A stretch of DNA of 64,000 nt, taken from IMG/VR virus record IMGVR_UViG_3300008117_000011, positions 159,672-223,671 of that record; one strand, 5' to 3'. Below are positions 31,304 through 48,153 of the stretch, in pieces. Both the position numbers and the translations under genes were made by a program. The notes under the pieces are model-generated. The model had not been told where the DNA came from, searched no databases, and saw nothing but the letters and a program-made list of their open reading frames with translations. Positions within the stretch are counted from its first letter, which is position 1; the number at the start of each line of letters is the position of its first letter.

Positions 31304-32938
31304 TTAACATTCTTTTCTTAATTCTGCTGGATAAAAATCAAAACGATTATGTTCGGTTGGTGTTATAAGAAGAAGTCCAGGATTTAATTTACCTTTAACT
31401 AAATTTTGAAAGTTATGGGACATTAAAGTTTGTTCATAAGGATTGTCAAATTTTGTCTCAATATAACATTTGTAATTACCTTCTTTTGATAAGACAATTG
31501 GCCAATTAGAAAGATAGATTTCCCCACTAGCGTAGGGGATACCATTTAATGATTTTATATTTTTAAATTCTAGACTTGGGGCGCTTGGATCATAACCAAC
31601 AACTGGTAGATTTGGTTTTTCCGGCCAATGATTTTCTCTGAAACTTTGGGGTGTATTGTACCAAGCCCATTGTGTTGTGTGACTTCCGAAAAATTCAGTA
31701 AAATTTAATTTTAAAAAATCAAAATTTTCTTTTTTAATTATTTGTAATGACGTACTATATAAATTTTTTACTTTTCTATTAAAACCATTTTTACAAACAT
31801 CACAATCTTTAGTAACAAAAGCCATATCGTCCTCAAAGAAATAGTAATAACCCAAATCGTCTTGTTGATTAAAGTGTTCGGCAATAAATTGTCTACCACC
31901 GGTAATACCTATATTATCTTTTTTAATATGTTCAAAACCATATTGTGAACAAAGATTTAAATATTCTTTTGTTGTTGTTAAATCCGTTGAGTTATCCAGT
32001 AAAAATTTTTTTGTTTTTGTTATAAAATCTATATCGTACTCTAACATTGATTCAATTAAAGTTTCAAATTGTTTTGGTGAGTTAAACGTAATAACATATA
32101 GACCAACATCATTACCTTCTTTTTTTACTTTATTATTTTTAATATTTTCAAAAAACGTATATAATAAACCATCAGAATTAATAAGGTAATTATCAATTAA
32201 ATTTGGGTGTAAATAACTCATAATCGTAAAGATACTTTCTTCTGTTCCCATTAAATTATTATTTAATGTATGTGTAAGTAAACTATAATATATTGTGTTT
32301 AAATCGCTAATATATTTTTTAGGACCACCAAAAAAACCACCCCTACTTACATAGTTTGTTTTTGTTTTTGCATACTCACATAACTTATCGTATGAAAATC
32401 CGTGAACCTCTGTGTTTGCCTCATATGGAAAAGATATAAATAAAAACTTATCGTATTTTTTATTTATTTTCTCAAGAACATTATCATTTGTGAAATATCC
32501 TGGACTTACTGTGTTTGAGATTCCAGCGTCAATCCAGAATAGTTTTTCAGAATTAAATTTATCTAAAATTACAGCATCGTGCAGTAAAAACATTTTAGAC
32601 ATTACAATTGGATTATACATCTCAAGTTTTGCTTGTGTTGATTCTTTTAACCAACCAACTTGATTGTACCAATTTTCATTTGTTCTTATTTTTTGTATTT
32701 TGTCAAAAAATTCATTATTTCTAAACCAAGAAAGGTCCCGGATAATAAATTGTGTTTTTGACATATCCCTTCTTTCACTAACAAATTTATAAAGAGATTC
32801 GTCCCCAAAAATTATGAGATTACAATCAATTTTTAATAAATCATCAAATTTATTTAAATAGTAATCAAAAGACCTATTCCATCCTTTTTCTAAATTACCC
32901 CTACCAATATCCCATAATCCGGTAACAAGTGTCATCAT
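31304..32938 (-). CDS. HtrL/YibB-like glycosyltransferase fused to a second GT-A-like domain
   Basis: TLVTGLWDIGR, MSKMFLL, FWIDAG, GGFFGG, GTEESI; second domain YYFFEDD. Confidence 0.7.
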   Translation of the reverse strand: MMTLVTGLWDIGRGNLEKGWNRSFDYYLNKFDDLLKIDCNLIIFGDESLYKFVSERRDMSKTQFIIRDLSWFRNNEFFDKIQKIRTNENWYNQVGWLKESTQAKLEMYNPIVMSKMFLLHDAVILDKFNSEKLFWIDAGISNTVSPGYFTNDNVLEKINKKYDKFLFISFPYEANTEVHGFSYDKLCEYAKTKTNYVSRGGFFGGPKKYISDLNTIYYSLLTHTLNNNLMGTEESIFTIMSYLHPNLIDNYLINSDGLLYTFFENIKNNKVKKEGNDVGLYVITFNSPKQFETLIESMLEYDIDFITKTKKFLLDNSTDLTTTKEYLNLCSQYGFEHIKKDNIGITGGRQFIAEHFNQQDDLGYYYFFEDDMAFVTKDCDVCKNGFNRKVKNLYSTSLQIIKKENFDFLKLNFTEFFGSHTTQWAWYNTPQSFRENHWPEKPNLPVVGYDPSAPSLEFKNIKSLNGIPYASGEIYLSNWPIVLSKEGNYKCYIETKFDNPYEQTLMSHNFQNLVKGKLNPGLLLITPTEHNRFDFYPAELRKEC

Positions 32939-34281: not shown

Positions 34282-36414
34282 TTGATAACTTTAATGAAAA
34301 AATTAATGATAATAACACCCCATTTGTCAACAGGGGGTCAACCACAATTCTTATTAAAAAAGATTGAATTATTAAAAGATACGTACGACTTATACTGTGT
34401 TGAATATAACTTTGTGTCTCCAGATTTTGTTGTACAAAGAAATAAAATAAAAAATTTATTAATACTTAATTTTATCTCATTAGAAGAAAATGAATTGAGA
34501 TTGACAAATGTTATTAAGGATATAAATCCAGATATAATTTGGTTTGAGGAGTTACCAGAAACGTTTATAACAAACGAAGAATGTGAGTACATTTATAAAA
34601 AAGAAAGAAGTTGGCAAATAATTGAAACGACCCATTCCTCCCAAGATTTAAGTTTTAAAAAAAGATACGCTCCGGATAAATTTATTTTTGTATCCGATTT
34701 ATCAGTTAAACAATACGACAATTTAGGAATTGAATCTTCAGTAATTCAATACCCAGTAAACAAGAAAACAAAAAATACTGACAACTTTAAAAGTAAGTTA
34801 TCATTTGATAATGAGTATAAACATATTGTAATTGTTGGGTTATTTACCCAGGGTAAAAATCAATCGTATGCTTTTGATATTGCAAGAAAATTAGAAAAAG
34901 AAAAAGTATTATTTCACTTTGTTGGTAATACTGCAATCAATTTTAAAGACTACTGGGAACCACTACTTTTAAATAAACCTAAAAATTGTATACTACACGG
35001 AGAAAAAGAAAATATTGATGATTATTTACAAGCTTCTGATTTATTTTTATTTCCCTCAAAATTTGAATTAAATCCTTTGGTTGTTAAAGAAGCTCTTTGT
35101 TATGATGAGTTACCTATTGTTATGTTTAATTTAGAATCATATTGTGGTCAGTATGATAATGAACCTAACATTAGTTTTATGAAAAATGACATTAATATTG
35201 ATTCAAAACTAATTAAAGAATTACTTTTTGGTAAAACCAAGACCTATCAAGATATTGAGGGTTGGTTTTCATATGAAGAACTATACAATAAATTTGTAAA
35301 CGAATGTTCTGATGGAAGTACAATTGTTGAAATTGGTAGTTGGTTTGGTAAATCAACAAAATACATTTCAGATAAAATAAAAGAAACAAATAAAAATGTT
35401 AAGTTAATTTCTGTTGATACTTTTAAAGGGTCTCAAAATGAGCAACTCCATATAGATACTGTTGGTAATTTTGATAATGACATATATCAAATTTTCTATG
35501 AAAATTTAATTGGTAATAAAATAGAAGTAATAAAAGACTCTTCACATAACGCTTCTAAATTATTTAACAATGGGTCCATTGATTATCTAATGATTGATGG
35601 GGATCATAGTTATGAAGGTGTTAAAAATGATATTGAAGATTTTTTCTACAAAGTTAAACCGGGTGGTATTATTTCAGGTGATGATTATGTAGTCTTTGAT
35701 GGTGTAACAAAAGCTGTAAATGAGTATTTTAATGGGACTCAAAATATAACAACAAACGGATATAACTGGTATTATAAAATACCTAAAATTCAAGTAATTC
35801 ATATTTCAACATTACCTAAGCAAAAAAGGGCTATAAAATCAATTACAAATATAAAAGAGTTAAAGAGATACAACATTGATATTAAGTTTATTGAGAATTA
35901 TGTATATGATGGTGAAGTTGATGTATCAACCCACAGATATCCAGAAAGTCAAAATATAAATAAGGGTCACTATGGTTGTTATTTAGCACACAAAGAGGCA
36001 ATACATTCAATTGATAATGACTATGACTATACAATTATAATGGAGGAGGACGCTTACATTTTTGAGAATCTTAATGATTTTGTTGATATAGTTCATAAAG
36101 CCATTTTTAATTGTATTAAAGATGAAATATACTTTGTATCATTTGGTGGATTAATTTTAGATTACGCACTAAACGAATATGATAATTTATTTAATGAGTG
36201 TTGGCATCAAACTATGGCTCATTGTTATATGATACCAAACAAGTATAAACAATGGTACGTTGATAAATTTGAGACTAGCCCTTGGGATTCGGCAGATCTT
36301 TGGTTTAACCATATTTTTTGTCACGATAGAAAATTAAGATTAATAACCAAAAAATTCTATAGTAAACAACTAGATGGTACCTCACTTATTGATAATGTAA
36401 AAAAAGAATATTGA
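34282..36414 (+). CDS. Multidomain GT4 glycosyltransferase + class I methyltransferase + GT25-like domain
   Basis: GKNQ, DLFLFPSKFELNPLVVKEA (GT4); VEIGSWFGKS, IDGDHSYE, GGIISGDDY (methyltransferase); GCYLAH, IMEEDA (GT25-like). Confidence 0.8.
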   Translation: MITLMKKLMIITPHLSTGGQPQFLLKKIELLKDTYDLYCVEYNFVSPDFVVQRNKIKNLLILNFISLEENELRLTNVIKDINPDIIWFEELPETFITNEECEYIYKKERSWQIIETTHSSQDLSFKKRYAPDKFIFVSDLSVKQYDNLGIESSVIQYPVNKKTKNTDNFKSKLSFDNEYKHIVIVGLFTQGKNQSYAFDIARKLEKEKVLFHFVGNTAINFKDYWEPLLLNKPKNCILHGEKENIDDYLQASDLFLFPSKFELNPLVVKEALCYDELPIVMFNLESYCGQYDNEPNISFMKNDINIDSKLIKELLFGKTKTYQDIEGWFSYEELYNKFVNECSDGSTIVEIGSWFGKSTKYISDKIKETNKNVKLISVDTFKGSQNEQLHIDTVGNFDNDIYQIFYENLIGNKIEVIKDSSHNASKLFNNGSIDYLMIDGDHSYEGVKNDIEDFFYKVKPGGIISGDDYVVFDGVTKAVNEYFNGTQNITTNGYNWYYKIPKIQVIHISTLPKQKRAIKSITNIKELKRYNIDIKFIENYVYDGEVDVSTHRYPESQNINKGHYGCYLAHKEAIHSIDNDYDYTIIMEEDAYIFENLNDFVDIVHKAIFNCIKDEIYFVSFGGLILDYALNEYDNLFNECWHQTMAHCYMIPNKYKQWYVDKFETSPWDSADLWFNHIFCHDRKLRLITKKFYSKQLDGTSLIDNVKKEY

Positions 36415-36415
36415 T

Positions 36416-38233
36416 ATGAATTCACAAATATTTAAAGAAACAATCATTTCGGAAATAGAAAAAACAAATTTAACAAATAATAAAATTGGTGATATTTTAA
36501 AATTTATTTACACACAAATAAATGGTGCCTTTTTAGAAATAAAAGGTAATGTTGATAAAAATTTTAATGTTAGTTTTGAGGATGACCAGGGAAATATAGT
36601 TTATCAAACTGAATTAAAAACTGATATGTGGTCAAGACTAAATGCTAAGTATTTTAAAAATTATACAATAAAAATACAAAATGATGATTACTATAATGAA
36701 ATAAAAACCGATTTAAAAGATAAAAGAATTTATATAACTCTTGAGTCTAAATCATTAGGTGATACTTTGGCCTGGGTTCCTTATGTTGATGAATTTAGAA
36801 AAAAACATAGTTGTGATATAGTCCTATCAACATTTATGAATGATTTATTTAAGGAGCAATATCCGGAGATAGAATTTGTAGAACCAGGTACTTCTGTAGA
36901 TAATATATTTGGTATGTTTAATATCGGATGGTTTTATAATCAAAATGACGAAATTGATTACAGTAGACACCCAAATAATTTTAGAACTCAACCATTACAA
37001 AAAACGGCTTCAGATATTTTAGGTCTTGACTATGAAGAAATAAGACCAAAATTAAAACTAAAAGAAAATGTTAAAAAAGAAAAAAAAGTAGGTATTGCAA
37101 TACACGGAACCGCCCAAAGTAAGTATTGGAATAACCCAACTGGTTGGCAAGAGGTTGTTGATTATCTAATTAAACTTGGATATGAAGTTGTTTTATATTC
37201 TGTTGAGCCGGATGGTTATATGGGTAATTTTCATCCTACTGGAATTAAAAATTTCCCAAGAAGTCCATTACAAGAAGTAATTTACGATTTGCAAAGTTGT
37301 GAATTTTTTATTGGTATTGGATCTGGTCTTTCTTGGTTAGCCTGGAGTGTTGGTTTACCAACTATTTTAATATCCGGCTTTAGTGAGGAGTACACCGAAA
37401 CAAAATCAAATACTTATCGTGTTATAAATAATAATGTGTGTACCGGGTGTTTTAATTCCCATAGATTAAATCCTAGTGACTGGAATTGGTGTCCTATTCA
37501 TAAAAACACTGAAAGACAATTTGAATGTAGTAAATCAATAAATTCTAAATTAGTTATTAGTAAAATAAAACAAATTGGTTTTAACTGGGGTTTTTTTGAT
37601 TCAGACCAAAACTTTAAAAAACTAGTTGAGGAAGAATTATTTGTTAATAATATATATGAAAAGTATTTTAATATAAAAGATGGGGATATCGTAATGGATA
37701 TTGGTGCTAGTGTTGGTCCTTTTGTAAAATCATTATGTGATAGAAAATTAAAAAAGGTTTACGCTATTGAACCTAGTAAAACGGAGTTTAATATATTAGA
37801 AGAAAATATTAGTAATAAAAATGTTGTTTTAGTAAATAAAGCAATTGGTAATACAAATCAAACAAATTGTCAACTTGATGAAGTATATGGAGATGATAAG
37901 AGTGTTGACTATATTACTTTTGATAAATTATTAGAAGATTATAAAATTGATAAGATAGATTTTTTAAAATTAGATTGTGAAGGTGGTGAGTATGATATAT
38001 TCACAAATGAAAATTTAAAATTTTTAAAACAAATACCAAAAATAGTTGGTGAGTGGCATTTAAATGACCCAACAAAAAAAGAAAAATTTTTTAAATTTAA
38101 AAATGAAATTTTGTCAAACTTTTCTAAATTTACAATAAATTCAGTTGATGGTTACGATATAACACAAAGACTAAACGATCAAAATTTTATAGAGTATTAT
38201 AGTGAGATTTTAATCTACATTGAAAATAATTAA
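36416..38233 (+). CDS. TibC/Aah-like autotransporter O-heptosyltransferase fused to an FkbM methyltransferase
   Basis: SLGDTLAWVPY, QPLQ, KYWNN..GW, FIGIGSGLSWLAW, LISGFS, four-Cys site CTGC..WCP..FECSKSI; C-terminal DIGASVG, IEP, KLDCEGGE. Confidence 0.85.
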   Translation: MNSQIFKETIISEIEKTNLTNNKIGDILKFIYTQINGAFLEIKGNVDKNFNVSFEDDQGNIVYQTELKTDMWSRLNAKYFKNYTIKIQNDDYYNEIKTDLKDKRIYITLESKSLGDTLAWVPYVDEFRKKHSCDIVLSTFMNDLFKEQYPEIEFVEPGTSVDNIFGMFNIGWFYNQNDEIDYSRHPNNFRTQPLQKTASDILGLDYEEIRPKLKLKENVKKEKKVGIAIHGTAQSKYWNNPTGWQEVVDYLIKLGYEVVLYSVEPDGYMGNFHPTGIKNFPRSPLQEVIYDLQSCEFFIGIGSGLSWLAWSVGLPTILISGFSEEYTETKSNTYRVINNNVCTGCFNSHRLNPSDWNWCPIHKNTERQFECSKSINSKLVISKIKQIGFNWGFFDSDQNFKKLVEEELFVNNIYEKYFNIKDGDIVMDIGASVGPFVKSLCDRKLKKVYAIEPSKTEFNILEENISNKNVVLVNKAIGNTNQTNCQLDEVYGDDKSVDYITFDKLLEDYKIDKIDFLKLDCEGGEYDIFTNENLKFLKQIPKIVGEWHLNDPTKKEKFFKFKNEILSNFSKFTINSVDGYDITQRLNDQNFIEYYSEILIYIENN

Positions 38234-38490
38234 ATTACGTTTAGTAATTCTTTCACTTTATTATTAACATCATCATCAGTCCAATTGCCAATGTTGATAT
38301 AATCTTGACCCTCCCATAAAGTTAAAATCCGACTAAGACCTGTTGTACTAAAAAAGGATATCCTAGCTACAACCTTTTCTCCATCATCACTAACAGTGTC
38401 AATACTGATTTTATCGGTTAATAATGTTGTCTCTTCTCTTGTAATAACAATCACCGATTGTTCACTACTTAATTGTATTTCTCTTCCCAT
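38230..38490 (-). CDS. Small hypothetical protein, possibly fibre-associated
   Basis: 86 aa directly downstream of the collagen-like fibre; LWEG..Y..IGNWTD. Confidence 0.5.
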   Translation of the reverse strand: MGREIQLSSEQSVIVITREETTLLTDKISIDTVSDDGEKVVARISFFSTTGLSRILTLWEGQDYINIGNWTDDDVNNKVKELLNVI

Positions 38491-38501
38491 AATTTAATTT
38501 T

Positions 38502-41500
38502 TTATCCTACCCAAGTTAACTTAACATAACTGTTCCACCAGAACGTAGTTGGTGCTGCATTTGTAGTATTTTGAGCACCCTGAACGCTTACAGTTACCGT
38601 TGTTACCGGCGCTAGAGTACCTTTTATTGTATAAATACCAGCTCCAGCTGTATTTGTTGCAAATTCTGAACCAGCAAATATAGTTCCTCCGGCGGCAATT
38701 TGATTATTTTCGTATAAACCATTACCAACACTATAATTACTTCCTAGGTCAATTCTACCCCAGGTTCCAGAAACTGTTAGTAATCTTAATCTTGCACCAC
38801 CAGCACCAGCTGTTACCCTACCATATAGTTCAATTTCATATATTGACCCAGCGTTAAGAACAAACGTCATACTAGGTAAATCAACAAATGTGTTATTAGT
38901 GAACGCTAAATCATTAGTTTGTCTAATAAAATCACCATAAAAAACTTTATGTCTAGCATCACTATTTGTTGTATATAGTTGATTACTATTATATTCTATC
39001 GTACCAGCCTCTGGTGTTGTATTTAATGTACCATTAGTAAATTTAAGAGGTGCAGTTCCAGCGGTTGCAGCTCCAGCTCCTAAATGTAGTTTTGCTGTTG
39101 GTGTTCCTTGTGTAATCCCAATAGCATTGGCGGACGCGTCTAAAAAAAACATATTTGTTTGCGTGTCTGACTCAATTCTAAAATCTGAATTAGCATCCCC
39201 CACTTCATTAAATATACTACTACCCTGAGTTGATCTGTATGCAATATTAGTGGTTCCAATAGAGGCTATCGCTTCAAATGCGATATTAGTTGCAGTCCCA
39301 TTAACAGAAGAATCAACCCCAATTGATGTACCACCAACAGAATCTGCGGAAGCTCTAAGACCAAATGTTTGCCCATTGGATGCATTTGATCTTCCGACCA
39401 GTAATCCACTTGATGGTCCTCCCGCCGCAGCAACACTTGATTGGTTAACAATACTATAAGGGTTTGCAAACGTTGTTGTTAAAAGCGAAGCGTTCCCTAT
39501 AAGATCAAGATTAAATGATGGTGTTGTATTTATACCTAGTTGCGTCCCATTAAATATTAAATTTGCTTCGCCTTGTAGTGTATTTGCCGTTCCGGTTGCT
39601 GTTACTACATAGTCATTTACGTTATTGTTTATAATAACACTAGCACCAGATGTCCCAGAAGAACCCCCACTACCTGCAGTACCAGAAGTACCATTAACTC
39701 CAGATGTTCCAGAAGTACCATTAACTCCAGATGTTCCAGAGGATCCACCACTCCCACTAGTACCTCTAGTGCCACTTGTCCCAGAAGAACCTCCACTACC
39801 CGCAGTACCACTCGTTCCATTTATTCCAGAAGTTCCAGAAGTTCCATTAACGCCAGAAGTCCCACTCGTTCCATTTATTCCACTAGTTCCACCACTACCC
39901 GCGGTACCTGATGTACCGTTAATACCAGAGGTTCCACCACTACCAGAAGTCCCTCTAGTACCACTTGTACCACCACTACCTGCGGTACCACTCGTTCCAT
40001 TTATTCCAGAAGTTCCACTCGTTCCATTTATCCCACTAGTACCAGAAGTTCCTGAAGAACCTCCGCTACCTGCAGTACCACTCGTTCCATTTATTCCAGA
40101 AGTTCCATTTATTCCACTTGTACCTCCACTACCAGAAGTACCATTTATTCCACTTGATCCTCCACTGCCAGAAGTTCCAGAGGTACCATTTATACCGGAA
40201 GTACCACTCGTTCCGTTAATACCAGAAGTCCCAGAAGTTCCACTCGTTCCGTTAATACCAGAAGTCCCAGAAGTTCCACCACTACCAGAAGTCCCTCTAG
40301 TACCACTCGTACCACTTGTTCCGTTAACACCAGAAGTTCCATTTGTTCCATTAATGCCAGATGTCCCTGAAGTTCCATTAATACCAGATGTCCCTGAAGA
40401 ACCACCACTACCAGAAGTCCCAGAAGTTCCAGAAGACCCCCCACTACCAGCAGTACCACTCGTTCCATTTATTCCCCCACTACCAGCAGTACCACTCGTT
40501 CCGTTTATTCCAGACGTGCCAGAAGTTCCTGAAGAACCTCCGCTACCGGATGTTCCATTAGTCCCATTTATTCCACTAGTTCCTGAAGTACCCCCACTAC
40601 CAGAAGTTCCACTTGTACCACCACTGCCCGCTGTACCTGATGTGCCATTAATACCAGAAGTTCCTCCGCTACCTGCAGTCCCACTCGTTCCGTTTATTCC
40701 AGACGTGCCAGAAGTTCCTGAAGTTCCTGAAGAACCTCCGCTACCGGATGTTCCATTAGTCCCAGAAGAACCACTTGTTCCGGATGTCCCATCAATTCCA
40801 CTAGTACCAGAAGTTCCGTTAACACCAGAAGTACCACTAGTCCCATCAATTCCACTAGTACCAGAAGTTCCGTTAACACCAGAAGTACCATTGGTTCCGG
40901 AAGACCCTCCACTACCGCTTGTCCCATTAGTTCCAGAAGATCCGCTAGTTCCATCAACACCACTAGTACCAGAGGTTCCATCAACACCACTAGTACCAGA
41001 GGTTCCATCAACACCACTAGTACCAGAAGTTCCGTCAACACCACTAGTACCAGAAGTTCCATTTGTTCCAGAAGTTCCATTAACACCACTAGTTCCAGAA
41101 GTTCCATTAACACCACTAGTTCCAGAAGTTCCATTAACACCACTAGTTCCAGAAGTTCCATCTACCCCACTAGTACCTGATGTACCGTCAATTCCACTGG
41201 TACCAGAAGTTCCGTTAGTACCTGATGTACCGCTAATACCATTGGTACCAGACGTTCCATCAATTCCAGAGGTTCCATTTATACCGCTTGTACCAGAAGA
41301 GCCATCTACGCCACTTGTTCCAGAAGTTCCATCTACCCCACTAGTACCGGAAGTTCCATCTACCCCACTAGTACCGGAAGTTCCATTTGTTCCAGAAGTA
41401 CCCCAGAGGTTCCACTTGTACCAGAAGTACCATCAATACCACTAGTACCAGAAGTTCCATCAATACCACTAGTACCGGATGTTCCGTCAATACCACTAGT

Positions 41501-41869
41501 ACCATCAATTCCAGAGGTCCCAGAGGTTCCGTCAATCCCTGATGTACCAGAAGTGCCGTCTATACCAGAGGTTCCGTCTACCCCACTAGTGCCAGATGTA
41601 CCATCAATACCTGATGTTCCAGAAGTACCATCAACACCAGAAGTACCAGAAGTTCCGTCTATACCAGAGGTCCCAGAGGTGCCTGCGGTTCCAGAAGTTC
41701 CACTTGAACCAAAAGTTGTTGATATATAGTTTGCAACTTGATCTATTGTTGCCTTATATGAAGAACCCCCTGAATATTGTATTGTATCACCGGTATTTAC
41801 GATGTGAATTAATGTATCACCAGTTATATATGGGGCAATTGTTCTATCTGTTAATCTTTGTTGTGACAT
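38502..41869 (-). CDS. Gly-Thr-Ser collagen-like fibre protein (~1121 aa if repaired), frame broken at 41401-41404
   Basis: ORF 41360..41869 leaves the GTS frame at a CCCC run; the other frame continues through the repeat into SGASVIINNNVNDYVVTATG..GEANLIF..FNEVGDANSDFRIESD and ORF 38502..39203; removing 2 nt gives 1122 codons. Confidence 0.8.
39645..41710 (-). repeat. ~2.06 kb coding Gly-X-Y repeat (GTS, GSS, GIN, GVN, GID, GVD, GTA, GTR), about 230 triplets
   Basis: 9 nt periodicity (gttccagaa / gtaccacta variants) with synonymous divergence. Confidence 0.92.
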
Positions 41870-41884
41870 ATCACATATAAATAT

Positions 41885-42190
41885 CTAGGCTTCAAAAATA
41901 AATGTTGGACCGTCCATAAATATGAAAATCATTTCATCCTCAAATATTTTAACAGTATTAATATCTGTAGAACATTCTAGATAAATAAATTTCTCACATC
42001 CATTTGAATCAATTATTTTAACTAATAGCTGGTCAACATTATCAAGTGGTGGTGGGACATTAAAGATTTGAATTGGCGTTATTGTTGTTGACGCACTAAC
42101 GGAAAAACAATATGTGTTTGTGATATCACAAACATATACATCATATGTTGGTGTTCCGGTAATTGCTGTAATTTGAATTTGCCTTGCCAC
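41885..42190 (-). CDS. Small hypothetical virion protein
   Basis: 101 aa; PTYDVYVCD..VKIIDSNGC; within the fibre block. Confidence 0.5.
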   Translation of the reverse strand: MARQIQITAITGTPTYDVYVCDITNTYCFSVSASTTITPIQIFNVPPPLDNVDQLLVKIIDSNGCEKFIYLECSTDINTVKIFEDEMIFIFMDGPTFIFEA

Positions 42191-42216: not shown

Positions 42217-45174
42217 TTAAACGTCATCTAACCAAGATAAAGATACTTGAGCACCAGTATTGTTACCACCAGTTGCAATTATAGATACAGTTTCACCTGG
42301 ATTTATAAAAATTTCATAATTAGAAATATCAATAGTGTTACTATCCGTTTTATTTAAAATTGTTTTATATGCGGATCTACCAGTTCCTGCAGTGTAAGTC
42401 CCGTCAATAGCCGCTTGTACAGGTGAATTTACACTTACTGATGTATATGTTGGTGCCACTGAAAACGTACCATTTTTAACTAAATTAAATGTTATAGTAC
42501 TTACACCATCTGTTACAAGTGTTAATGTTTTAATAAGTGCAATTGTTTTATTTGGTACACCATTAAATGTTAGTGGGTTTGATAATGATATCATACTTTT
42601 ATTTGCCGTTGCACCAGGACTACCGTCTGCCGAATAATTGACACCATTATATATAATTATACCCTCAACAAACGCAGCCATTGATGCGTTTTTTATTGAA
42701 ACTGCGGTATTATTTGTTGTGTTTTGTGATATAAAACTAATTGGAAATGTTGGGTTAATTAAACTTGGTGATGTGTTTTGATTTGCAAATTTAATTTGAT
42801 GTGCCGGTGAAAAAAGACCTGTGGTCGCACTTTCAATATTAAATTGAATGGCCCCAAATCCTAACCATTGTACAACAATTTCATATACATTTCCTTTTGT
42901 TGGATCTAATAATACCCCACTTGGATTACTAGGGTTTGGTGAACTTTGTGTTGATGACCCATCAAATTTGTCAATGTTCCAAGAAGTTTGAGGAATAAAT
43001 TCATCGGTTCCTTGAAATCTTCTCATAACACCAAATGATGTCCCACTATATCCAATAAAAAATCCATTTGTGTTATCACCCCATCCAGCCCACTGAGTGT
43101 TTCCTGTAGCACCACTTGTAAATAAACAAGTAAATCTAATGTTTAATCCTTGACCATTTCTATATTTTGCTAGTTTTACAGTTCTTAATTGACCTGTGTT
43201 ATTAGTTGCTGCCGCTGTTGAGATGTTTACAAAAGTATTACCACTTTCGTAAGTAACGGTTCCACCAGTTGTAAAACCTGTTGTTATTAAATCAGTATTA
43301 ATACCGTATGGGTGTGTAATTTGAATAAGTGGTGACATTTCAGCAACTTGTAGTTCACCAAAAGCAGTTAATGGTTCGTCAATTTGAACTTTTAAGTGAC
43401 CCTCTTCATCAACACCAACGTTTCTAAAATTAAACCCCTCATCTTGACCCAATAGAATGTTTCTACCTAAGTTCGCTAAAACCTCTGGTGGTACTGGTGA
43501 GTTTGTTGAAAGTAAAAAACCACTTAAAGGTTTTATAAGTAATTTAGTATCAAAATAAAAATCCGTTTGATTTGTTGATGATGTATTTGTAAATTCTAAT
43601 TTAGCGTATGGTGAAAGTGCTGGTGATGAAAATGTTTGTAGTCCAGCGCCAGCTACATACATCACCATAGATGTCCTTAATAAATCAGTCCCAGCAGAAT
43701 CACTATAAAAATAAACGGTCAATATACCATCTGTATCTGAAAGAATTGATGTTTGTTGTTGTGAAAAATCTGGTGAAAGAGCAAAAACTGATGATGTATA
43801 TGTTTGACCAGACAACAATGGTGTTGTTGTTTTAAAAGCAAAACCATCTTGTCTAGTGTTAGCATAAGTACCATCAGGTTGAACCCCAGCTGTAATATTT
43901 CTACCCAAGTTTGCAACCATACCAGATGCAATTGGTGCAGTTAAATTAAGTACTTGACCATTAATTGATTTTGTTGTGAATTTTGTATCAAAATAAAAAT
44001 CGGTTTGTCCTGTTGCTGAGGTATTCTCAAAAGTATATTTTATGTAAGGAGCAAATGCTGGTGCACCAAACATTTGAAAACCATCAGTCGCCGCGTAAGG
44101 TAAACTTAGTGTTCTTATTTGGTCAGTACCAGCAGAATCAGAATACCAAAACACTCTTAATGTACCTGCTTGGTCTGCTCTTACGTGTGTTTGAACTTGT
44201 GAAAACCCAGGTGATAGTGCTAAAACCCCTGAGTCATATGTTTGACCTGAAGCTAAAGGCGTTGTGGTTAAAAACGCATAACCATCTGTTTTAACATTTT
44301 CATAACTACCGTCAGGTTCTTGACCAACAATAACATTCCTTCCTAAGTTTGCTACCATACCTGCCGCTATAGGGGCTGCCAAATTTAAAACTTGTCCATT
44401 AATTGATTTTGTTGTGAATTTTGTATCAAAATAAAAATCAGTTTGACCAGTTGCTGAAGTGTTTTCAAAAGTATATTTTATGTAAGGAGCAAAAGCCGGA
44501 GCCCCAAACATTTGGAACCCGTCAGTTGCCGCGTACGGTAAAGTTAGAACCCTTATTTCATCTGTACCCGCAGAATCAGAATACCAAAACACTCTTAATG
44601 TACCTGCCTGATCCGCTCTTACGTGGGTTTGAACTTGTGAATAACCGGGAGATAAAGCTAAAACACCTGAGTTAAAAGTTTGACCTGAACCCAAAGGTGT
44701 TGTTGTTAAAAATCCATACCCATCTGCTTTTAAGTTATCATAATTACCATCAGGGTCCTCACCAATTATAACAGATTTTGTAACATTTGCATCCCAATCT
44801 GTTTGTAATGAACCACTAAGATTTGAAGTTAGTGCTTCAAAATCACCTGCGGTTGTTTGTAATCTAATAAAAGTTTGGTTAGAATTACTTGTATTTGTAA
44901 ATCTAACCCTTGCATATTGTCTTGTAATAGTTATTCTGTGTACCTCATTTGTATTAGCACTTACGGACCAAGATATTGTGCTATCAGTATTTACACCATC
45001 TGGTGAAAAATCTAAAAATAATGTACCATTTTGATCTGTAAGAACCGCCATAACTATAGCGGAATATCTTTCAACGTCTACATATGTTCCGGTAAATGTT
45101 GTGCCCGACAATAATGGTGTTGTTGTTGAATTTGTGTCTAATACTTTATTTACTATTTGTGGTATAAAAGCCAT
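42217..45174 (-). CDS. Virion/fibre protein with tandem ~146 aa domains
   Basis: Unit TTTPLxSGQT..FYFDTK..ANLGRN repeats at 438 nt spacing (44581 vs 44143). Confidence 0.65.
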   Translation of the reverse strand: MAFIPQIVNKVLDTNSTTTPLLSGTTFTGTYVDVERYSAIVMAVLTDQNGTLFLDFSPDGVNTDSTISWSVSANTNEVHRITITRQYARVRFTNTSNSNQTFIRLQTTAGDFEALTSNLSGSLQTDWDANVTKSVIIGEDPDGNYDNLKADGYGFLTTTPLGSGQTFNSGVLALSPGYSQVQTHVRADQAGTLRVFWYSDSAGTDEIRVLTLPYAATDGFQMFGAPAFAPYIKYTFENTSATGQTDFYFDTKFTTKSINGQVLNLAAPIAAGMVANLGRNVIVGQEPDGSYENVKTDGYAFLTTTPLASGQTYDSGVLALSPGFSQVQTHVRADQAGTLRVFWYSDSAGTDQIRTLSLPYAATDGFQMFGAPAFAPYIKYTFENTSATGQTDFYFDTKFTTKSINGQVLNLTAPIASGMVANLGRNITAGVQPDGTYANTRQDGFAFKTTTPLLSGQTYTSSVFALSPDFSQQQTSILSDTDGILTVYFYSDSAGTDLLRTSMVMYVAGAGLQTFSSPALSPYAKLEFTNTSSTNQTDFYFDTKLLIKPLSGFLLSTNSPVPPEVLANLGRNILLGQDEGFNFRNVGVDEEGHLKVQIDEPLTAFGELQVAEMSPLIQITHPYGINTDLITTGFTTGGTVTYESGNTFVNISTAAATNNTGQLRTVKLAKYRNGQGLNIRFTCLFTSGATGNTQWAGWGDNTNGFFIGYSGTSFGVMRRFQGTDEFIPQTSWNIDKFDGSSTQSSPNPSNPSGVLLDPTKGNVYEIVVQWLGFGAIQFNIESATTGLFSPAHQIKFANQNTSPSLINPTFPISFISQNTTNNTAVSIKNASMAAFVEGIIIYNGVNYSADGSPGATANKSMISLSNPLTFNGVPNKTIALIKTLTLVTDGVSTITFNLVKNGTFSVAPTYTSVSVNSPVQAAIDGTYTAGTGRSAYKTILNKTDSNTIDISNYEIFINPGETVSIIATGGNNTGAQVSLSWLDDV

Positions 45175-45201: not shown

Positions 45202-48153
45202 TTACATTTGTAACCAAGTTCCTGTTCCTGTATTAAATAATATAATTGCACCTCCATCGGCATCTAATATTAGTGTTTGTGTGTTTTCAACTCCAATAAT
45301 TGTGTCTGTACCATTTGCAATAAATGTTATATTATTAATATATGAGTTTAACCCAATGTCTTTAACATCATACCTTAATCTACCAGATGTAACAGAATTA
45401 GGTAAATAAATTGTAGTTGCTGATATTGAAGAGTCAACACCAATAACATTGTCGGTTGTAAGGGCTGAATATGTGGCGCCGCTAACATAGGTGTAGTTAT
45501 TTCCAATAGTATTAACATTTCTATACTCAACCACACCAGTTGTTTCATTTCTCCCTAAAATTTGTGTTAAATTGTTATTAAGGTTTGGTATATCTGATAT
45601 TGTAATGGTGTTAGCGGTAAACCCATTTTGTACAACTGTTCCACCAGTAACAATTAAATCACCATCATATACTAAATCACCAACAACAACGACATCCCCC
45701 ACAACATCTAAATTACCATTAATACAAGTATTTCCTGTTACAGATAAAGTACACCCTGTTGTGTGTCCAGAAATATTGAATGACCCAATTTGGTTTGTGT
45801 TTCCTGTTACATTATAGTTACCAATCTGTGTTGTATTACCAGAAATTGTATAATTACCATTTAATGTTTTTGTATATTCCCAATATCCTTGTGATGAATT
45901 ATATGATATTAAATCACCATTTGTTTGACCACTAGTTTGAACATTGTGTAAATCACCTAAGTTATATCCTAATGATGGTCTGACAAATAGTGAACCATTA
46001 ACAGCAGCATCAATAACAATAGCCATTTGGATTTTAAGGTTTGGTTCAGTAGGTTCAAAACTAGTTAACCCACCAGGTATTGTTGGACTTACATAAAGTA
46101 TCGTACCATCAACCCAGGTTTCACCATATAGTGAACCTGTAGTGTTTACCCCCCTAATTAAGCCAAATTCATAAACATAACCATCTTCACCATTTAATAT
46201 GTTTTCCCCAGCAATACCTAATGTAAAATAGTATGGAATAGTACCATCTGCAATCATATACTCACCAAGTATTCTACCACTAGTACCAAGAGTACCAGAC
46301 GCTCTGACAACCCTACCTTTATTTATTGTCGCACCACTTTGGTTTTTAATATAATATAGATTGTCTAAACCAACTTTAAGGCTTACGTTATTTCCTTCTA
46401 AATCAACATCAAGTGTTCCATAATCAACATCCCAATGAAGCCTACCTTCTTGTACTGTTGGTACGTATGCGGTATTAAAATCAATGTAATTTGTATATAC
46501 TGATGTTGCGGATAATGAATTAAATTTTGAATCCCCCGATGCGGTAATCCAAGCAGTTTCAACACCCGCATTGTTCTCAACGATAATATTTTTATCATTA
46601 TCATTTCCAGTACCACCTTTAAATTGAACCCCCCCTAATATTGAATTTGTTGTAATTTCAGGTGATGTTGAATTATTATATGCTTGTTGTAAATTTGTTG
46701 TGGATGTTCCACCAAACTTAGACGCAAAAAAGAATTTAGCCTTAGTTTCGTCAGTTAAATCAGTTGCCGTACTTAATACAGATAAAACACCTATAAGAAC
46801 AGCATCGGTACTTAAATTAGGGAATGATATAAATGATTCATTTTGTAATGCTGAAATTGCTAATGCTAGTGTATTGTAATTTTGTTGACCATACATTACC
46901 ACAACTGAACCATCTTGTTGTAAGTAAATTCTTTGATTTGTTGCCTTTGTTCCTGTTATTGGTGTAATAACACCACCAAGGTCATAATTTAAAGGGTCAA
47001 TATCTGTTACATCTGTCAATGTCGCCCCTGTTTGTGTTCTATATTGAAATGTTCTAGGGTTTTCTCCTGTAACGTAAATAGTGTTTGGACTTAAAGTATT
47101 ATTTGCAAAATTAATACCTAACCCATATAGATAGCCAGCACTTGTATTAAACTTTAAATTAGCCCCATTTGTTGATGGTAGTATACCTCCATTAATTAAA
47201 TTAATAGGTGTGAACATATCTCGTAATTGACCCAATGGGGATAAAACAAAATCAGGTTGACTAAATACTGAATAAATTGATGTTTTATCTGGGTGGCTTA
47301 ATTTACCTAAAAATATATTTTGTCTTCTTTGTTGTTCCGATAAAGGTGTTGATTGTTGTGATATTGTACCACCACTATTTAAAAAAACAAATGTTTCAGT
47401 GGAAGTGTTAACAAAATTATCTGTGTTTACCCCACCACTATAAGATAAATAATATATTTGTGGACTTAAAGGGTTTGATGTGTCATCAACAATCCACCCT
47501 TTAACTGGTGATACATAAAATGTTGTTGTTGATGCTGTTGTAATACCTGTAAATTCAAACACACCTGTTGATGAGTTTACCGTAGATATATTATATCCTA
47601 AAGCTACCCAATCAGAACCATTACTAACCAATTGTAACGCATTTGTTTCACCAAGTATCACAAATGGTTTATCATCTATTGTTTCTGAACCAAAAGGTTG
47701 TACTGTTACAGCGCCTCCTCCATTATTTTTAATATTATATAATTTACCTTGTACACCTACCGCAGTTGGTAAATATATTGTAAAAGTTCCACCAGAAGCA
47801 TCTATCATAAAATCTTCTGTTTGTGCTGTATACGTTGAATTAATTGTCTTCTGTGGAAATATAATACCACCAGTTGATGTAATACCACTAGTTTGTGTTA
47901 AACCACTAACAAATAATGTATCGGCTGATAGACCATTTGTAAAAATTGTAGGACCGTAAACAGTTCCTCCGGATAATGTTGATAATCTATCCCACCCTAT
48001 TGGGAGTATTTGATTTGCTGTTGATCCTGATGTATATAAAATTGCATCAGCTGTATTAAGTGCTAATTCACCAGATGTTAGTCCACTTGCGGGTGGAACT
48101 TTTCCTGGGACATTAGACCTTTTAATAAGGAATGTCGTTTGTCTATTTGCCAT
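45202..48153 (-). CDS. Tail fibre-like protein, 983 aa
   Basis: N-terminal IKRSNVPGKVP..LTSGELALNTAD fibre motif; TNLQQAY; GNLDVVGD-type repeats; two IYLP..IK..TI..W modules. Confidence 0.65.
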   Translation of the reverse strand: MANRQTTFLIKRSNVPGKVPPASGLTSGELALNTADAILYTSGSTANQILPIGWDRLSTLSGGTVYGPTIFTNGLSADTLFVSGLTQTSGITSTGGIIFPQKTINSTYTAQTEDFMIDASGGTFTIYLPTAVGVQGKLYNIKNNGGGAVTVQPFGSETIDDKPFVILGETNALQLVSNGSDWVALGYNISTVNSSTGVFEFTGITTASTTTFYVSPVKGWIVDDTSNPLSPQIYYLSYSGGVNTDNFVNTSTETFVFLNSGGTISQQSTPLSEQQRRQNIFLGKLSHPDKTSIYSVFSQPDFVLSPLGQLRDMFTPINLINGGILPSTNGANLKFNTSAGYLYGLGINFANNTLSPNTIYVTGENPRTFQYRTQTGATLTDVTDIDPLNYDLGGVITPITGTKATNQRIYLQQDGSVVVMYGQQNYNTLALAISALQNESFISFPNLSTDAVLIGVLSVLSTATDLTDETKAKFFFASKFGGTSTTNLQQAYNNSTSPEITTNSILGGVQFKGGTGNDNDKNIIVENNAGVETAWITASGDSKFNSLSATSVYTNYIDFNTAYVPTVQEGRLHWDVDYGTLDVDLEGNNVSLKVGLDNLYYIKNQSGATINKGRVVRASGTLGTSGRILGEYMIADGTIPYYFTLGIAGENILNGEDGYVYEFGLIRGVNTTGSLYGETWVDGTILYVSPTIPGGLTSFEPTEPNLKIQMAIVIDAAVNGSLFVRPSLGYNLGDLHNVQTSGQTNGDLISYNSSQGYWEYTKTLNGNYTISGNTTQIGNYNVTGNTNQIGSFNISGHTTGCTLSVTGNTCINGNLDVVGDVVVVGDLVYDGDLIVTGGTVVQNGFTANTITISDIPNLNNNLTQILGRNETTGVVEYRNVNTIGNNYTYVSGATYSALTTDNVIGVDSSISATTIYLPNSVTSGRLRYDVKDIGLNSYINNITFIANGTDTIIGVENTQTLILDADGGAIILFNTGTGTWLQM

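What the first reader, a model, noticed from the sequence alone, without database searches (positions are those of the whole stretch)
36416..38233. TibC/Aah-type heptosyltransferase with intact four-Cys site, fused to FkbM, next to a Ser-rich fibre
Seen: GT9-like motifs plus C-x2-C...C...C, with an FkbM domain at the C-terminus; the gene converges on the GTS fibre operon. Established: TibC/Aah enzymes are iron-containing dodecamers that use ADP-heptose and are encoded beside their substrate autotransporter. Inference: the same enzyme-beside-substrate layout has been reused with a phage fibre, and the fused methyltransferase may methylate the added sugar. It would also imply a host that makes a nucleotide-heptose.
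Basis: partly seen in the sequence, partly recalled or inferred. Interest (0 to 1): 0.75.

Follow-up and report, generated by a model that had tools for sequence, protein, structure and literature searches.

The report
Phage TibC-like glycosyltransferase beside collagen-like fibre
A freshwater jumbo phage encodes a relative of the ring-shaped, iron-binding enzyme that E. coli uses to sugar-coat its adhesins, and this and dozens of other phages place that enzyme next to proline-free, serine/threonine-rich collagen-like fibres, which points to a sugar-coated viral collagen I found no report of.

Summary
ORF 36416-38233(+) encodes 605 aa. Residues ~28-387 form a TibC/Aah-type domain: NCBIfam TIGR04414 scores 288 bits (cut-off 200), TibC in the PDB gives E 4e-56, and the AlphaFold model matches TibC at TM 0.8 against ~0.5 for WaaC/WaaF. 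Residues ~426-560 form an FkbM methyltransferase. The catalytic Asp, the phosphate-binding Thr/Lys, the sugar-contacting Trp and all four iron-finger Cys are intact. The gene converges on a tail-fibre operon holding a (Gly-X-Y)244 fibre with X mostly Thr, Y mostly Ser and no Pro.

New here: the enzyme belongs to a large viral clade, separate from bacterial autotransporter heptosyltransferases. Of 58 non-redundant viral loci, 37 hold a Ser/Thr-rich collagen-like gene within 8 kb. The figures are 0/80 for control phage loci and 1/70 for bacterial loci. Bacterial loci instead hold AIDA-like passengers (35/70, against 0/80 viral). The fibres share only the repeat, not their end domains.

The adenine-contacting Arg-286 of TibC is never Arg in the viral clade (0/61, against 70/71 bacterial). 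No heptose pathway lies on this contig or 31 related phage records. One cultured relative infects Microcystis, whose LPS is reported heptose-free. Fibre glycosylation is therefore likely (~0.6), but ADP-heptose as donor is doubtful. I rate it a new variant of a known kind.

The parts
36416..38233 (+). 605-aa two-domain enzyme: a TibC/Aah-like protein O-glycosyltransferase fused to an FkbM methyltransferase
   Evidence: AlphaFold model pLDDT 85.6; Foldseek top hit TibC, TM 0.79-0.81, E 1e-31
36497..37576 (+). BAHT-like domain, residues ~28-387: N-terminal beta-barrel, GT-B core, thumb and iron finger. Holds D116 (= TibC D110), T232/K236 (= T226/K230), W307 (= W305), V288 in place of R286, and G302 in place of P300
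   Evidence: TibC residue roles taken from PMC4358343
37439..37528 (+). Four-Cys 'iron-finger' segment (C342, C345, C359, C371). Invariant in 61 viral and 9 MAG-derived homologues, and in 70-71 of 71 bacterial ones
   Evidence: lower pLDDT here (54-76), as expected for a metal site modelled without metal
37691..38095 (+). FkbM-family SAM methyltransferase domain, residues ~426-560, with the glycine-rich motif DIGASVG
   Evidence: phrog_8156 methyltransferase
34282..36414 (+). Upstream gene ending 1 nt before the TibC-like ORF. Triple-domain enzyme: GT4, Methyltransf_24 (TylF-like) and a weak GT25 match. The true start is probably an internal ATG a few codons in
   Evidence: The same GT4-MT24 + TibC-like gene pair occurs in L002
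32935..34182 (-). PF11397 'GlcNAc' glycosyltransferase of the Skp1 / polypeptide GlcNAc-transferase type. A possible second initiating protein O-glycosyltransferase
   Evidence: Pfam E 2.6e-69; phrog_24687 E 1e-164. Shared with only 2 other TibC-like loci
31304..32938 (-). 544-aa protein with an HtrL_YibB domain (a family associated with LPS-core gene regions, function unknown)
38502..41869 (-). Collagen-like fibre gene: 53-aa N-terminus, uninterrupted Gly-X-Y repeat, 378-aa C-terminal domain. The intact form in L083 has 244 triplets with X = T154/I35/S33/V21, Y = S148/N39/D25/G19 and no Pro. The window copy has a frame change near 41330-41400, probably from assembly
   Evidence: PHROG tail fibre / collagen-like minor tail families
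38230..38490 (-). 86-aa ORF, last gene of the fibre operon. No family match. A role as a fibre assembly factor is only a guess
41885..42190 (-). 101-aa ORF immediately upstream of the fibre gene. No family match
42217..45174 (-). 985-aa virion structural protein with internally triplicated ~190-aa units, in the same minus-strand operon
   Evidence: phrog_1645 E 7e-34; sequence; internal 80%-identical DNA repeat
45202..48153 (-). 983-aa tail fibre protein, first gene of the operon that ends with the collagen-like fibre
   Evidence: phrog_16641 / phrog_5668 tail fiber

Best explanation
The gene encodes a cytoplasmic, two-domain enzyme that modifies virion proteins.

The N-terminal part belongs to a viral sister clade of the bacterial autotransporter heptosyltransferases (TibC/Aah). 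It keeps the beta-barrel, the GT-B catalytic core with the Asp base, the beta-phosphate-binding Thr/Lys, the sugar-O4 Trp, the hydrophobic thumb tip and the four-Cys iron finger. It probably forms the same kind of ring oligomer.

Its most likely substrate is the phage's own Pro-free (Gly-Thr-Ser)n collagen-like tail fibre, encoded in the convergent operon. The enzyme would add a sugar to many Ser residues, mostly at the Y position, while the fibre is made in the infected cell.

The upstream GT4/GT25-type enzyme would extend the glycan. The two methyltransferase domains (FkbM here, TylF-like upstream) would O-methylate it.

The donor comes from the host pool. By homology it would be a nucleotide-heptose, but the adenine-recognising Arg is replaced in the whole viral clade, so the nucleotide, and possibly the sugar, may differ.

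Shown: family, fold, residue conservation, genomic linkage. Inferred: substrate, site, donor, oligomer, role of the methyltransferase.
For: Family and fold: TIGR04414 288 bits (cut-off 200). TibC E 4e-56. Model TM 0.79-0.81 to 4rap/4rb4.

Residues: D110, T226, K230, W305, F368 and C339/342/358/370 equivalents are conserved in all 61 viral sequences.

Viral clade: the query lies in a clade of 58 viral + 9 MAG rows with SH-aLRT support 95, apart from bacterial BAHTs.

Linkage:
- 51/80 viral loci (37/58 non-redundant) hold a Ser/Thr-rich Gly-X-Y gene within 8 kb, often directly adjacent.
- The figure is 0/80 for tail-sheath control loci and 1/70 for bacterial BAHT loci.
- Three of five 'negative' phage records have such a gene elsewhere on the contig.
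- The fibre family is the only widely shared neighbour (45/70 loci, next 17/70).
- Its N- and C-terminal domains are not shared between loci, so the repeat is the common element.

The closest relative, L002, has four G-T-S collagen-like genes convergent on the same GT4-MT + TibC-like pair. Cultured phage Mel-JY01 has a collagen-like fibre 1.7 kb upstream of its GT4...TibC-like fusion.

Bacterial BAHT loci carry AIDA-like passengers instead (35/70, against 0/80 viral).

TibC modifies Ser, not Thr, in contexts such as N-S-G-G, and works on synthetic peptides (PMC4358343). The fibre offers 148 Y-position Ser in T-S-G context.

The fibre operon is a virion/tail module. GT4 and FkbM fusions to this domain recur.
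Against: No biochemical evidence exists for any member of the viral clade.

Linkage is one-directional. Only 5 of 75 Ser/Thr-rich collagen-like viral loci found by a DNA pattern held a TibC-like gene, although their flanks were short and uneven.

9 of 26 fully flanked loci lack a collagen-like gene within 8 kb. At least one 85%-complete phage, G010, shows none with the pattern used.

The control loci come from a single phage lineage.

The switch in neighbour type and the loss of Arg-286 each map to one branch of the tree, so their coincidence counts as one evolutionary event, not as replicated evidence.

TibC recognises a folded beta-helix through its iron finger. A collagen chain is a very different acceptor.

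The donor is unresolved:
- R286 is replaced by V, and Q224 by H, in the donor pocket.
- No heptose pathway is present in this or related phage contigs.
Confidence: 0.6

Rival explanations
1. Same enzyme and same fibre substrate, but the donor is not ADP-heptose. The viral clade has re-tuned the nucleotide pocket and transfers a different NDP-sugar available in hosts that make no heptose, such as a GDP- or UDP-linked hexose. This rival concerns the donor only, so it overlaps with the best explanation.
For: TibC Arg-286 H-bonds adenine N1 and is described as the basis of ADP specificity; the R286A mutant loses activity (PMC4358343). The position is Arg in 70/71 bacterial BAHTs but V/L/I/A/T in 61/61 viral and 9/9 MAG-derived sequences.

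Q224, in the beta-phosphate loop, is invariant His in the viral clade.

No gmhA, hldE, gmhB, SIS_2, NTP_transferase or Epimerase gene is on this contig. No true heptose pathway is present in 30 viral records plus Mel-JY01. The one gmhA-like hit sits in a NeuB/PseF/PtmA nonulosonate cluster.

Mel-JY01 infects Microcystis. LPS of M. aeruginosa strains is reported to lack heptose (PMC4515613). The control genome Synechococcus elongatus gave no gmhA hit.
Against: W305 (heptose O4 contact), T226/K230 and D110 are all conserved.

The H-bond from Arg-286 is described as weak. Other GT9 enzymes bind ADP-heptose by different contacts.

Viral-clade genes also occur in betaproteobacterial MAG contigs whose genomes carry gmhA. 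The host of this phage is unknown and may make ADP-heptose.

Absence of heptose from LPS does not prove absence of the nucleotide sugar.
Confidence: 0.4
2. The enzyme glycosylates a different protein, and the collagen-like gene is a neighbour only because both sit in the fibre/glycosylation region. Candidates are another virion component (the 983-aa tail fibre, the 985-aa structural protein, capsid or decoration proteins) or a host surface protein.
For: 9/26 fully flanked viral loci have no collagen-like gene within 8 kb. Most Ser/Thr-rich collagen-like loci sampled had no TibC-like gene.

Known TibC substrates are beta-helical rods, and phage fibres and spikes are often beta-helical. L002 has a Peptidase_G2 spike protein nearby.
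Against: No other neighbour family is shared by more than 17/70 loci. The 983-aa, 985-aa, 101-aa and 86-aa proteins of this operon have no counterpart in the other TibC-like loci. AIDA-like passengers are absent from all viral loci. Three of five 'negative' phages do have G-[ST]-S genes elsewhere on the contig.
Confidence: 0.2
3. It is an LPS-core heptosyltransferase (WaaC/WaaF-like) that remodels host LPS, for example to block superinfection.
For: The Pfam GT9 domain is shared with WaaC/WaaF. An HtrL_YibB protein is nearby, and that family lies in LPS-core gene regions of enterobacteria (the location is from general knowledge).
Against: TIGR02193 (WaaC) scores 23 bits against a cut-off of 185, and RfaC NF008204 scores 18 against 437. 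Fold match to WaaC/WaaF is TM ~0.5 at E 1e-8, against TibC TM 0.8 at E 1e-31. The beta-barrel, thumb and iron finger are TibC-specific modules and are all present.
Confidence: 0.03
4. The glycosyltransferase domain is a catalytically inert scaffold or targeting factor. Some BAHT-family proteins are discussed mainly as partner or localisation factors of their autotransporter. Only the methyltransferase would be active.
For: Arg-286, needed for TibC activity, is missing.
Against: The catalytic Asp, Thr/Lys, Trp and many surrounding motifs are invariant across a large and diverse viral clade with more than 5,700 homologues. That pattern fits purifying selection on an active site. The recurrent fusion to further glycosyltransferase and methyltransferase domains fits a working glycan-building line.
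Confidence: 0.05

Closest known systems
TibC / AAH, the bacterial autotransporter heptosyltransferase (BAHT) family (E. coli; PDB 4RAP, 4RB4; NCBIfam TIGR04414)
   Same: Same domain plan: beta-barrel, atypical GT-B core, beta-hairpin thumb and 1Fe-0S four-Cys finger. Identity is 32-37% and model TM is 0.8. The catalytic Asp, Thr/Lys phosphate binders and sugar-O4 Trp are conserved. It is a soluble cytoplasmic enzyme encoded next to a long, periodic, Ser-rich rod-shaped protein.
   Different: It sits in a separate viral clade. The adenine-contact Arg-286 is replaced by an aliphatic residue and Q224 by His. The thumb tip is Y/M instead of F/V. It is fused to FkbM, and in relatives to GT4. The neighbour is a collagen-like phage fibre, not an autotransporter (0/80 viral loci have AIDA-like repeats). 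Donor, oligomeric state and iron content are untested.
LPS heptosyltransferases WaaC / WaaF (GT9)
   Same: Distant GT9 homology and the GT-B fold.
   Different: HMM scores are far below the cut-offs (23 against 185 bits). TM is only ~0.5. These enzymes have no beta-barrel, thumb or iron finger, and their acceptor is a lipid-linked sugar.
Glycosylated collagen-like filaments of Bacillus exosporium (BclA) and collagen glycosylation in Mimivirus (L230). Recalled from general knowledge, not tested here.
   Same: Microbial or viral Gly-X-Y proteins whose repeat is heavily O-glycosylated. In BclA the glycans are methylated and attached to Thr of GXT repeats. The concept is the same: surface fibre plus dedicated glycosyl- and methyl-transferases.
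   Different: Those systems use unrelated enzymes: rhamnosyl/GT2-type enzymes for BclA, and a lysyl hydroxylase-glucosyltransferase for Mimivirus. Neither uses a BAHT-type enzyme. BclA repeats contain Pro, whereas these fibres contain none.
Virion glycosylation in mycobacteriophages (capsid and tail-tube C-termini modified by phage glycosyltransferases). Recalled from general knowledge, not tested here.
   Same: Phage-encoded glycosyltransferases that decorate the phage's own structural proteins in the host cytoplasm.
   Different: Different enzyme families, different targets and different hosts. No collagen-like substrate and no TibC-like enzyme is involved.
Phage and prophage collagen-like tail fibre proteins (PHROG 'collagen like minor tail' phrog_1806, tail fibre phrog_5073)
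   Same: The fibre matches these families through its Gly-X-Y repeat and lies in a tail-fibre operon.
   Different: None of these is reported as glycosylated in the literature I could search. The composition here is extreme: X = Thr, Y = Ser, no Pro, 244 uninterrupted triplets.

Membership tests
BAHT (TibC/Aah autotransporter O-heptosyltransferases) | Matches the family HMM (NCBIfam TIGR04414, equivalog) above its curated cut-off | tested here: met
   287.9 bits against a cut-off of 200, residues 49-387; 289.6 bits in the genome scan
BAHT (TibC/Aah autotransporter O-heptosyltransferases) | TibC protomer architecture: N-terminal beta-barrel, GT-B core, beta-hairpin thumb and iron-finger insertion | tested here: met
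   AlphaFold model pLDDT 85.6, strands at 28-109 followed by the GT-B core. Foldseek to 4rap/4rb4: TM 0.79-0.81 over ~373 columns, E 1e-31
BAHT (TibC/Aah autotransporter O-heptosyltransferases) | Catalytic base Asp-110 and beta-phosphate binders Thr-226 / Lys-230 | tested here: met
   D116, T232 and K236 in the query; invariant in 61/61 viral homologues. Residue roles from PMC4358343
BAHT (TibC/Aah autotransporter O-heptosyltransferases) | Heptose-O4 contact Trp-305 | tested here: met
   W307 in the query; invariant in all 141 sequences compared
BAHT (TibC/Aah autotransporter O-heptosyltransferases) | Adenine-N1 contact Arg-286, described as highly conserved in the family, as the basis of ADP specificity, and as required for activity | tested here: not met
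   V288 in the query. The position is Arg in 70/71 bacterial BAHTs and 0/61 viral and 0/9 MAG-derived sequences. The flanking P-L-Q-E motif anchors the alignment
BAHT (TibC/Aah autotransporter O-heptosyltransferases) | Four Cys ligands of the 1Fe-0S iron finger (C339, C342, C358, C370) | tested here: met
   C342, C345, C359 and C371 align with them and are invariant in the viral clade. Actual iron binding is not testable with these tools
BAHT (TibC/Aah autotransporter O-heptosyltransferases) | Thumb-tip hydrophobic contacts (Phe-265, Val-266, Phe-368) that build the dodecamer | tested here: inconclusive
   Y268, M269 and F369 in the query. Y/M is invariant in the viral clade, and the position varies (L/I/V...) among bacterial members. 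The residues stay hydrophobic, but oligomerisation cannot be computed here
BAHT (TibC/Aah autotransporter O-heptosyltransferases) | Encoded beside an AIDA-I/TibA-type autotransporter substrate | tested here: not met
   AIDA-I passenger-like sequence is found in 35/70 bacterial BAHT loci and 0/80 viral loci. The neighbour here is a collagen-like fibre
BAHT (TibC/Aah autotransporter O-heptosyltransferases) | Uses ADP-heptose to O-heptosylate Ser; forms an iron-containing dodecamer | not testable with these tools
   Needs enzyme assays, metal analysis and SEC or cryo-EM
FkbM-family SAM-dependent methyltransferases | Matches PF05050 / TIGR01444 above their cut-offs, with an intact glycine-rich SAM motif | tested here: met
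   53.7 bits (cut-off 22.7) and 67 bits (cut-off 37.7), residues 426-560. The motif DIGASVG is visible. The Rossmann-like fold is modelled at pLDDT 85-97
LPS heptosyltransferases WaaC/WaaF | Matches the WaaC/WaaF equivalog HMMs; GT-B without TibC-specific modules | tested here: not met
   TIGR02193 scores 23 against 185 bits and NF008204 scores 18 against 437 bits. TM to WaaC/WaaF is ~0.5
Collagen-like (Gly-X-Y) phage fibre proteins (the neighbour) | Long uninterrupted Gly-X-Y repeat in a virion or tail-fibre gene | tested here: met
   244 triplets in L083. PHROG tail fibre / collagen-like minor tail families match at E 1e-68 to 1e-80. Triple-helix formation itself is not testable here

The most novel reading that the evidence does not exclude
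A large, so far undescribed viral branch of the TibC/Aah family acts as a ring-shaped 'collagen glycosylase'. It would hyper-glycosylate Ser at the Y position of proline-free (Gly-Thr/Ser-Ser)n phage fibres, using a donor other than ADP-heptose. The methylated glycan, rather than proline or hydroxyproline, would stabilise or shield the triple helix. This would be a new substrate class and a new donor specificity for the family, and the first glycosylated phage collagen.
Probability: 0.3. Interest if true: 0.85.

Novelty: new variant of a known kind. Interest (0 to 1): 0.7.

Why it matters
BAHT enzymes are known only as partners of virulence autotransporters in Proteobacteria. This analysis shows a much larger, mainly viral sister clade. 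There are more than 5,700 clustered homologues and more than 250 IMG/VR stretches. Databases auto-name them 'autotransporter strand-loop-strand O-heptosyltransferase', although these phage loci show no autotransporter sequence.

The consistent genomic partner is an unusual proline-free, Ser/Thr-saturated collagen-like fibre. If the link is functional, three things follow:
- It gives a new acceptor class for a structurally remarkable ring enzyme.
- It may explain how Pro-free collagen helices in phage fibres are stabilised or protected.
- It adds a widespread mode of virion glycosylation in abundant freshwater phages, which could affect host recognition and protease resistance.

The clade-wide replacement of the adenine-contact Arg offers a natural experiment in donor specificity.

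The work also corrects annotation. The collagen-like fibre of the cultured Microcystis phage Mel-JY01 appears to be annotated on the wrong strand. That phage offers a culturable system to test all of this.

Tried and rejected
1. Megablast of 16 kb around the gene against GenBank phages found no match. The phage has no close cultured relative. The nearest are Mel-JY01, at 30% sheath and 47% TibC-like identity, and huge uncultured phages.

2. Heptose pathway. gmhA, hldE domains I and II, and gmhB are absent from the contig, as are SIS_2, NTP_transferase and Epimerase. The single gmhA-like hit among related phages (G007) first looked like support for heptose. It sits in a NeuB/PseC/PseF/PtmA nonulosonic-acid cluster, so I rejected it as heptose evidence. 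The gmhA near L008 is a housekeeping gene in an ordinary betaproteobacterial chromosome region with pyruvate kinase and threonine dehydratase, so it is not part of a phage island.

3. Reverse association. A DNA pattern for G-[ST]-[ST] repeats retrieved 75 Ser/Thr collagen-like viral loci, and only 5 held a TibC-like gene. Their flanks were short and irregular, so this limits the claim but does not refute it.

4. Host inference failed. The contig has no tRNAs and no Terminase_6N hit. DNA polymerase has only 23-33% hits, to Salinibacter and Nostoc phages.

5. Literature searches for TibC, heptosyltransferase or BAHT together with phage, virus or collagen-like found nothing relevant.

I removed those rows and did not send them elsewhere.

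7. Raw reads (run X21) gave almost no coverage, so the frame-change check rests on Logan contigs and on L083.

8. I considered testing whether loss of Arg-286 co-evolves with the collagen neighbour. Both changes map to a single branch, so no independent contrasts exist, and I did not present this as statistical evidence.
Full report
**What is there.** The window is the last 64 kb of a 223,671-bp IMG/VR virus contig. The contig is linear, CheckV estimates it 76% complete, its GC is 31% and it has no tRNAs. It is a myovirus: it has a tail sheath, a DNA polymerase B, a tail fibre and a virion structural protein. It occurs in many freshwater and lake metagenomes. Its sheath has more than 596 close relatives in IMG/VR. 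No cultured phage is close. The best is Microcystis phage Mel-JY01, at 30% sheath identity.

ORF 36416..38233(+) encodes 605 aa. It starts one base after the stop of a 710-aa GT4 + Methyltransf_24 + weak-GT25 enzyme. Its stop overlaps the end of a convergent minus-strand operon. That operon runs: tail fibre (983 aa), virion structural protein (985 aa), a 101-aa ORF, the collagen-like fibre, and an 86-aa ORF. Two further glycosylation genes lie upstream on the minus strand. One is a PF11397 Skp1-type GlcNAc-transferase homologue (E 3e-69). The other is an HtrL_YibB protein.

**Checking the observation.** Residues 49-387 match NCBIfam TIGR04414 (hepto_Aah_TibC) at 288 bits against a cut-off of 200. 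WaaC models reach only 18-23 bits. phmmer against the PDB gives TibC (4RAP/4RB4) at E 4e-56. An AlphaFold model (pLDDT 85.6) superposes on TibC with TM 0.79-0.81 at E 1e-31. WaaC and WaaF reach TM ~0.5 at E 1e-8. Residues 426-560 are an FkbM methyltransferase above both curated cut-offs.

I took TibC residue roles from Yao et al. 2014 (PMC4358343). The query keeps the catalytic base (D116 = D110), the beta-phosphate binders (T232/K236 = T226/K230), the heptose-O4 Trp (W307 = W305), F369 (= F368) and all four iron ligands (C342/345/359/371).

**The fibre.** On the minus strand, 41869->38502 holds a 53-aa N-terminus, a long Gly-X-Y repeat and a 378-aa C-terminal domain. The window copy changes frame near 41330-41400. 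A near-identical contig (L083) carries an intact 1163-aa gene that is 124 nt longer in the repeat. In three other runs the repeat shatters into 100-250-nt unitigs, and the contigs entering it disagree with the window exactly at 41329-41400. I therefore treat the frame change as an assembly artefact.

The intact repeat has 244 uninterrupted triplets. X is T154/I35/S33/V21 and Y is S148/N39/D25/G19, with no proline. It matches PHROG tail-fibre and 'collagen like minor tail' families. The 606-aa '+'-strand ORF 39625..41445 (PEVPLVP...) is only the shadow of this repeat.

**Relatives.** The nearest (60-73% identity) are metagenomic, many on 100-480-kb contigs. JGI auto-names them 'autotransporter strand-loop-strand O-heptosyltransferase'. 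Architectures are: the domain alone (~390 aa), +FkbM, GT4+domain (~727 aa), and GT4+domain+FkbM.

IMG/VR holds at least 254 matching stretches at 48-61% identity. True bacterial genomes (Acetobacteraceae, Burkholderia/Paraburkholderia, Reyranella, Selenomonadales, enterobacterial plasmids) reach only 32-40%. In a tree of 141 domains, the query lies in a supported clade (SH-aLRT 95) of 58 viral plus 9 MAG-derived rows, apart from the bacterial BAHTs. PHROGs v4 has no family for this domain.

**What travels with the viral enzyme.** Among 80 viral loci (+/-8 kb), 51 contain a Gly-X-Y ORF of at least 10 triplets. Almost all are Pro-free, with X = T/S and Y = S, and a Ser+Thr share of X/Y positions of 0.6-0.99. 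Many start within 150 bp of the TibC-like gene. Using a stricter Ser/Thr-rich criterion:

| Set of loci | With Ser/Thr-rich Gly-X-Y gene |
|---|---|
| Non-redundant viral TibC-like loci | 37/58 |
| Tail-sheath control loci (886 kb) | 0/80 |
| Bacterial BAHT loci | 1/70 |

These counts are (Fisher p = 6e-19). The controls come from one lineage.

Clustering all neighbouring ORFs shows the fibre family is the only widely shared neighbour (45/70 loci, next 17/70). The fibres' N- and C-terminal domains are not conserved between loci, so the repeat is what is shared. Three of five phage records without a nearby collagen gene carry one elsewhere on the contig.

The closest relative (L002, 66% identity) has the same GT4-MT + TibC-like gene pair, converging on four G-T-S collagen-like genes. 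In cultured Mel-JY01, an 805-aa collagen-like ORF (L162 635..3052, +) lies 1.7 kb upstream of a 1226-aa GT4...TibC-like fusion. The GenBank CDS there (739..2298, -) is the PEVP shadow frame.

Conversely, AIDA-I passenger-like sequence is found in 35/70 bacterial BAHT loci and 0/80 viral loci. A Salmonella plasmid shows the classic Aah-AIDA-I pair. The two clades therefore have different neighbours.

The linkage is one-directional. Of 75 Ser/Thr collagen-like viral loci found by DNA pattern, only 5 held a TibC-like gene, though their flanks were short.

**The donor problem.** TibC Arg-286 contacts adenine N1 and is described as the basis for ADP specificity; the R286A mutant loses activity. The position is Arg in 70/71 bacterial BAHTs. 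It is V/L/I/A/T in all 61 viral and 9 MAG-derived sequences, and V288 in the query. Q224, in the phosphate loop, is invariant His in the viral clade. About 25 columns separate the clades in total.

The contig has no gmhA, hldE, gmhB, SIS_2, NTP_transferase or Epimerase gene. Among 30 related viral records and Mel-JY01, two of them at least 93% complete, only one has a gmhA-like gene. That gene sits in a NeuB/PseC/PseF/PtmA nonulosonate cluster, not a heptose pathway. Mel-JY01 infects Microcystis, and LPS of M. aeruginosa strains is reported to lack heptose (PMC4515613).

Against this, W305 and the other contacts are conserved. Viral-type genes also occur in betaproteobacterial contigs whose genomes have gmhA. 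The donor is therefore open. I put ADP-heptose at roughly 40-50%.

**Most likely mechanism.** This part is inferred. In the infected cell the enzyme, probably as a TibC-like ring, adds a sugar to many Ser residues of the fibre's repeat. TibC modifies Ser and not Thr, in contexts such as N-S-G-G, and it accepts synthetic peptides. The fibre offers 148 Ser in T-S-G context. The adjacent GT4/GT25 enzyme would extend the glycan. The FkbM and TylF-like domains would methylate it. The PF11397 enzyme could initiate on Thr. A dense glycan coat could stabilise or protect a Pro-free triple helix. Precedents recalled from general knowledge are glycosylated Thr in worm cuticle collagen and BclA.

**Rivals.**
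- A different donor (~0.4; this overlaps with the main explanation).
- A different protein substrate (~0.2).
- An inert scaffold (~0.05).
- An LPS heptosyltransferase (~0.03).

**Comparison and novelty.** The enzyme works like a BAHT and passes the family HMM. It fails two family features: Arg-286, and a neighbouring autotransporter substrate. I therefore file it as a new viral variant of the BAHT kind, not as an autotransporter heptosyltransferase. I found no publication linking BAHT-type enzymes to phages or to collagen-like proteins in the searchable library.

Noticed in passing
window 39625-41445 (+): A 606-aa open frame rich in P-E-V-P-L-V-P is only the reverse-complement shadow of the Gly-X-Y repeat. 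The repeat also raises local GC to 0.45 in a 31% GC genome.
   Followed up: yes
L162 (Microcystis phage Mel-JY01, PP395634.1) 1-3052: The GenBank CDSs 1..651(-) and 739..2298(-) appear to be the same kind of PEVP shadow frame. The plausible real gene is 635..3052(+), an 805-aa collagen-like fibre that absorbs the annotated 'hypothetical protein' 2519..3052. The record also starts inside another Gly-X-Y stretch (14-502, +).
   Followed up: partly
window 32935-34182 (-): A strong match to PF11397, the family of the eukaryotic cytoplasmic Skp1 hydroxyproline/polypeptide GlcNAc-transferase (E 3e-69), in a phage. It also matches phrog_24687 at E 1e-164. It could be a second initiating protein O-glycosyltransferase, acting on Thr of the G-T-S repeat.
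   Followed up: partly
window 42217-45174 (-): The 985-aa virion structural protein contains three tandem ~190-aa units, two of them ~80% identical at DNA level (43750-44335 against 44188-44773).
   Followed up: no
L170 (G007:C1:79000-98000): A related 219-kb phage carries a long operon for nonulosonic-acid synthesis. It includes a NeuB-like synthase, a PseF-like cytidylyltransferase, a PseC-like aminotransferase, a PtmA-like reductase, a gmhA/PtmF-like isomerase and a GDP-fucose-synthase-like enzyme. This points to a sialic-acid-like sugar supply encoded by the phage.
   Followed up: partly
L002 11509-14421 (-): Three tandem paralogous ~320-aa genes. Each has 13-14 G-[TS]-S triplets followed by a very Gly-rich domain (GGGGGG runs). 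They sit beside a 1251-aa collagen-like fibre and a Peptidase_G2 spike protein.
   Followed up: no
window 14116-17451 (-) and loci L292-L371: The tail sheath is unusually long at 1111 aa, and only its last ~300 aa match sheath families. It has more than 596 relatives at 81-93% identity in IMG/VR. This is an abundant, uncultured freshwater jumbo-phage lineage.
   Followed up: partly
L082 against window 39224-39343: A second contig of the same phage lacks 120 nt (40 codons, in frame) in the C-terminal domain of the fibre. This suggests strain-level variation in the putative receptor-binding part.
   Followed up: no
L005-L011 (Polaromonas, Burkholderiaceae and Methylococcales MAG contigs): TibC-like genes of the viral type (no Arg-286) also occur on contigs binned into proteobacterial MAGs. 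At least one (L008/L171) lies in an ordinary chromosomal context, with short G-T-S stretches next to it. This could be a prophage or a bacterial use of the same system.
   Followed up: partly
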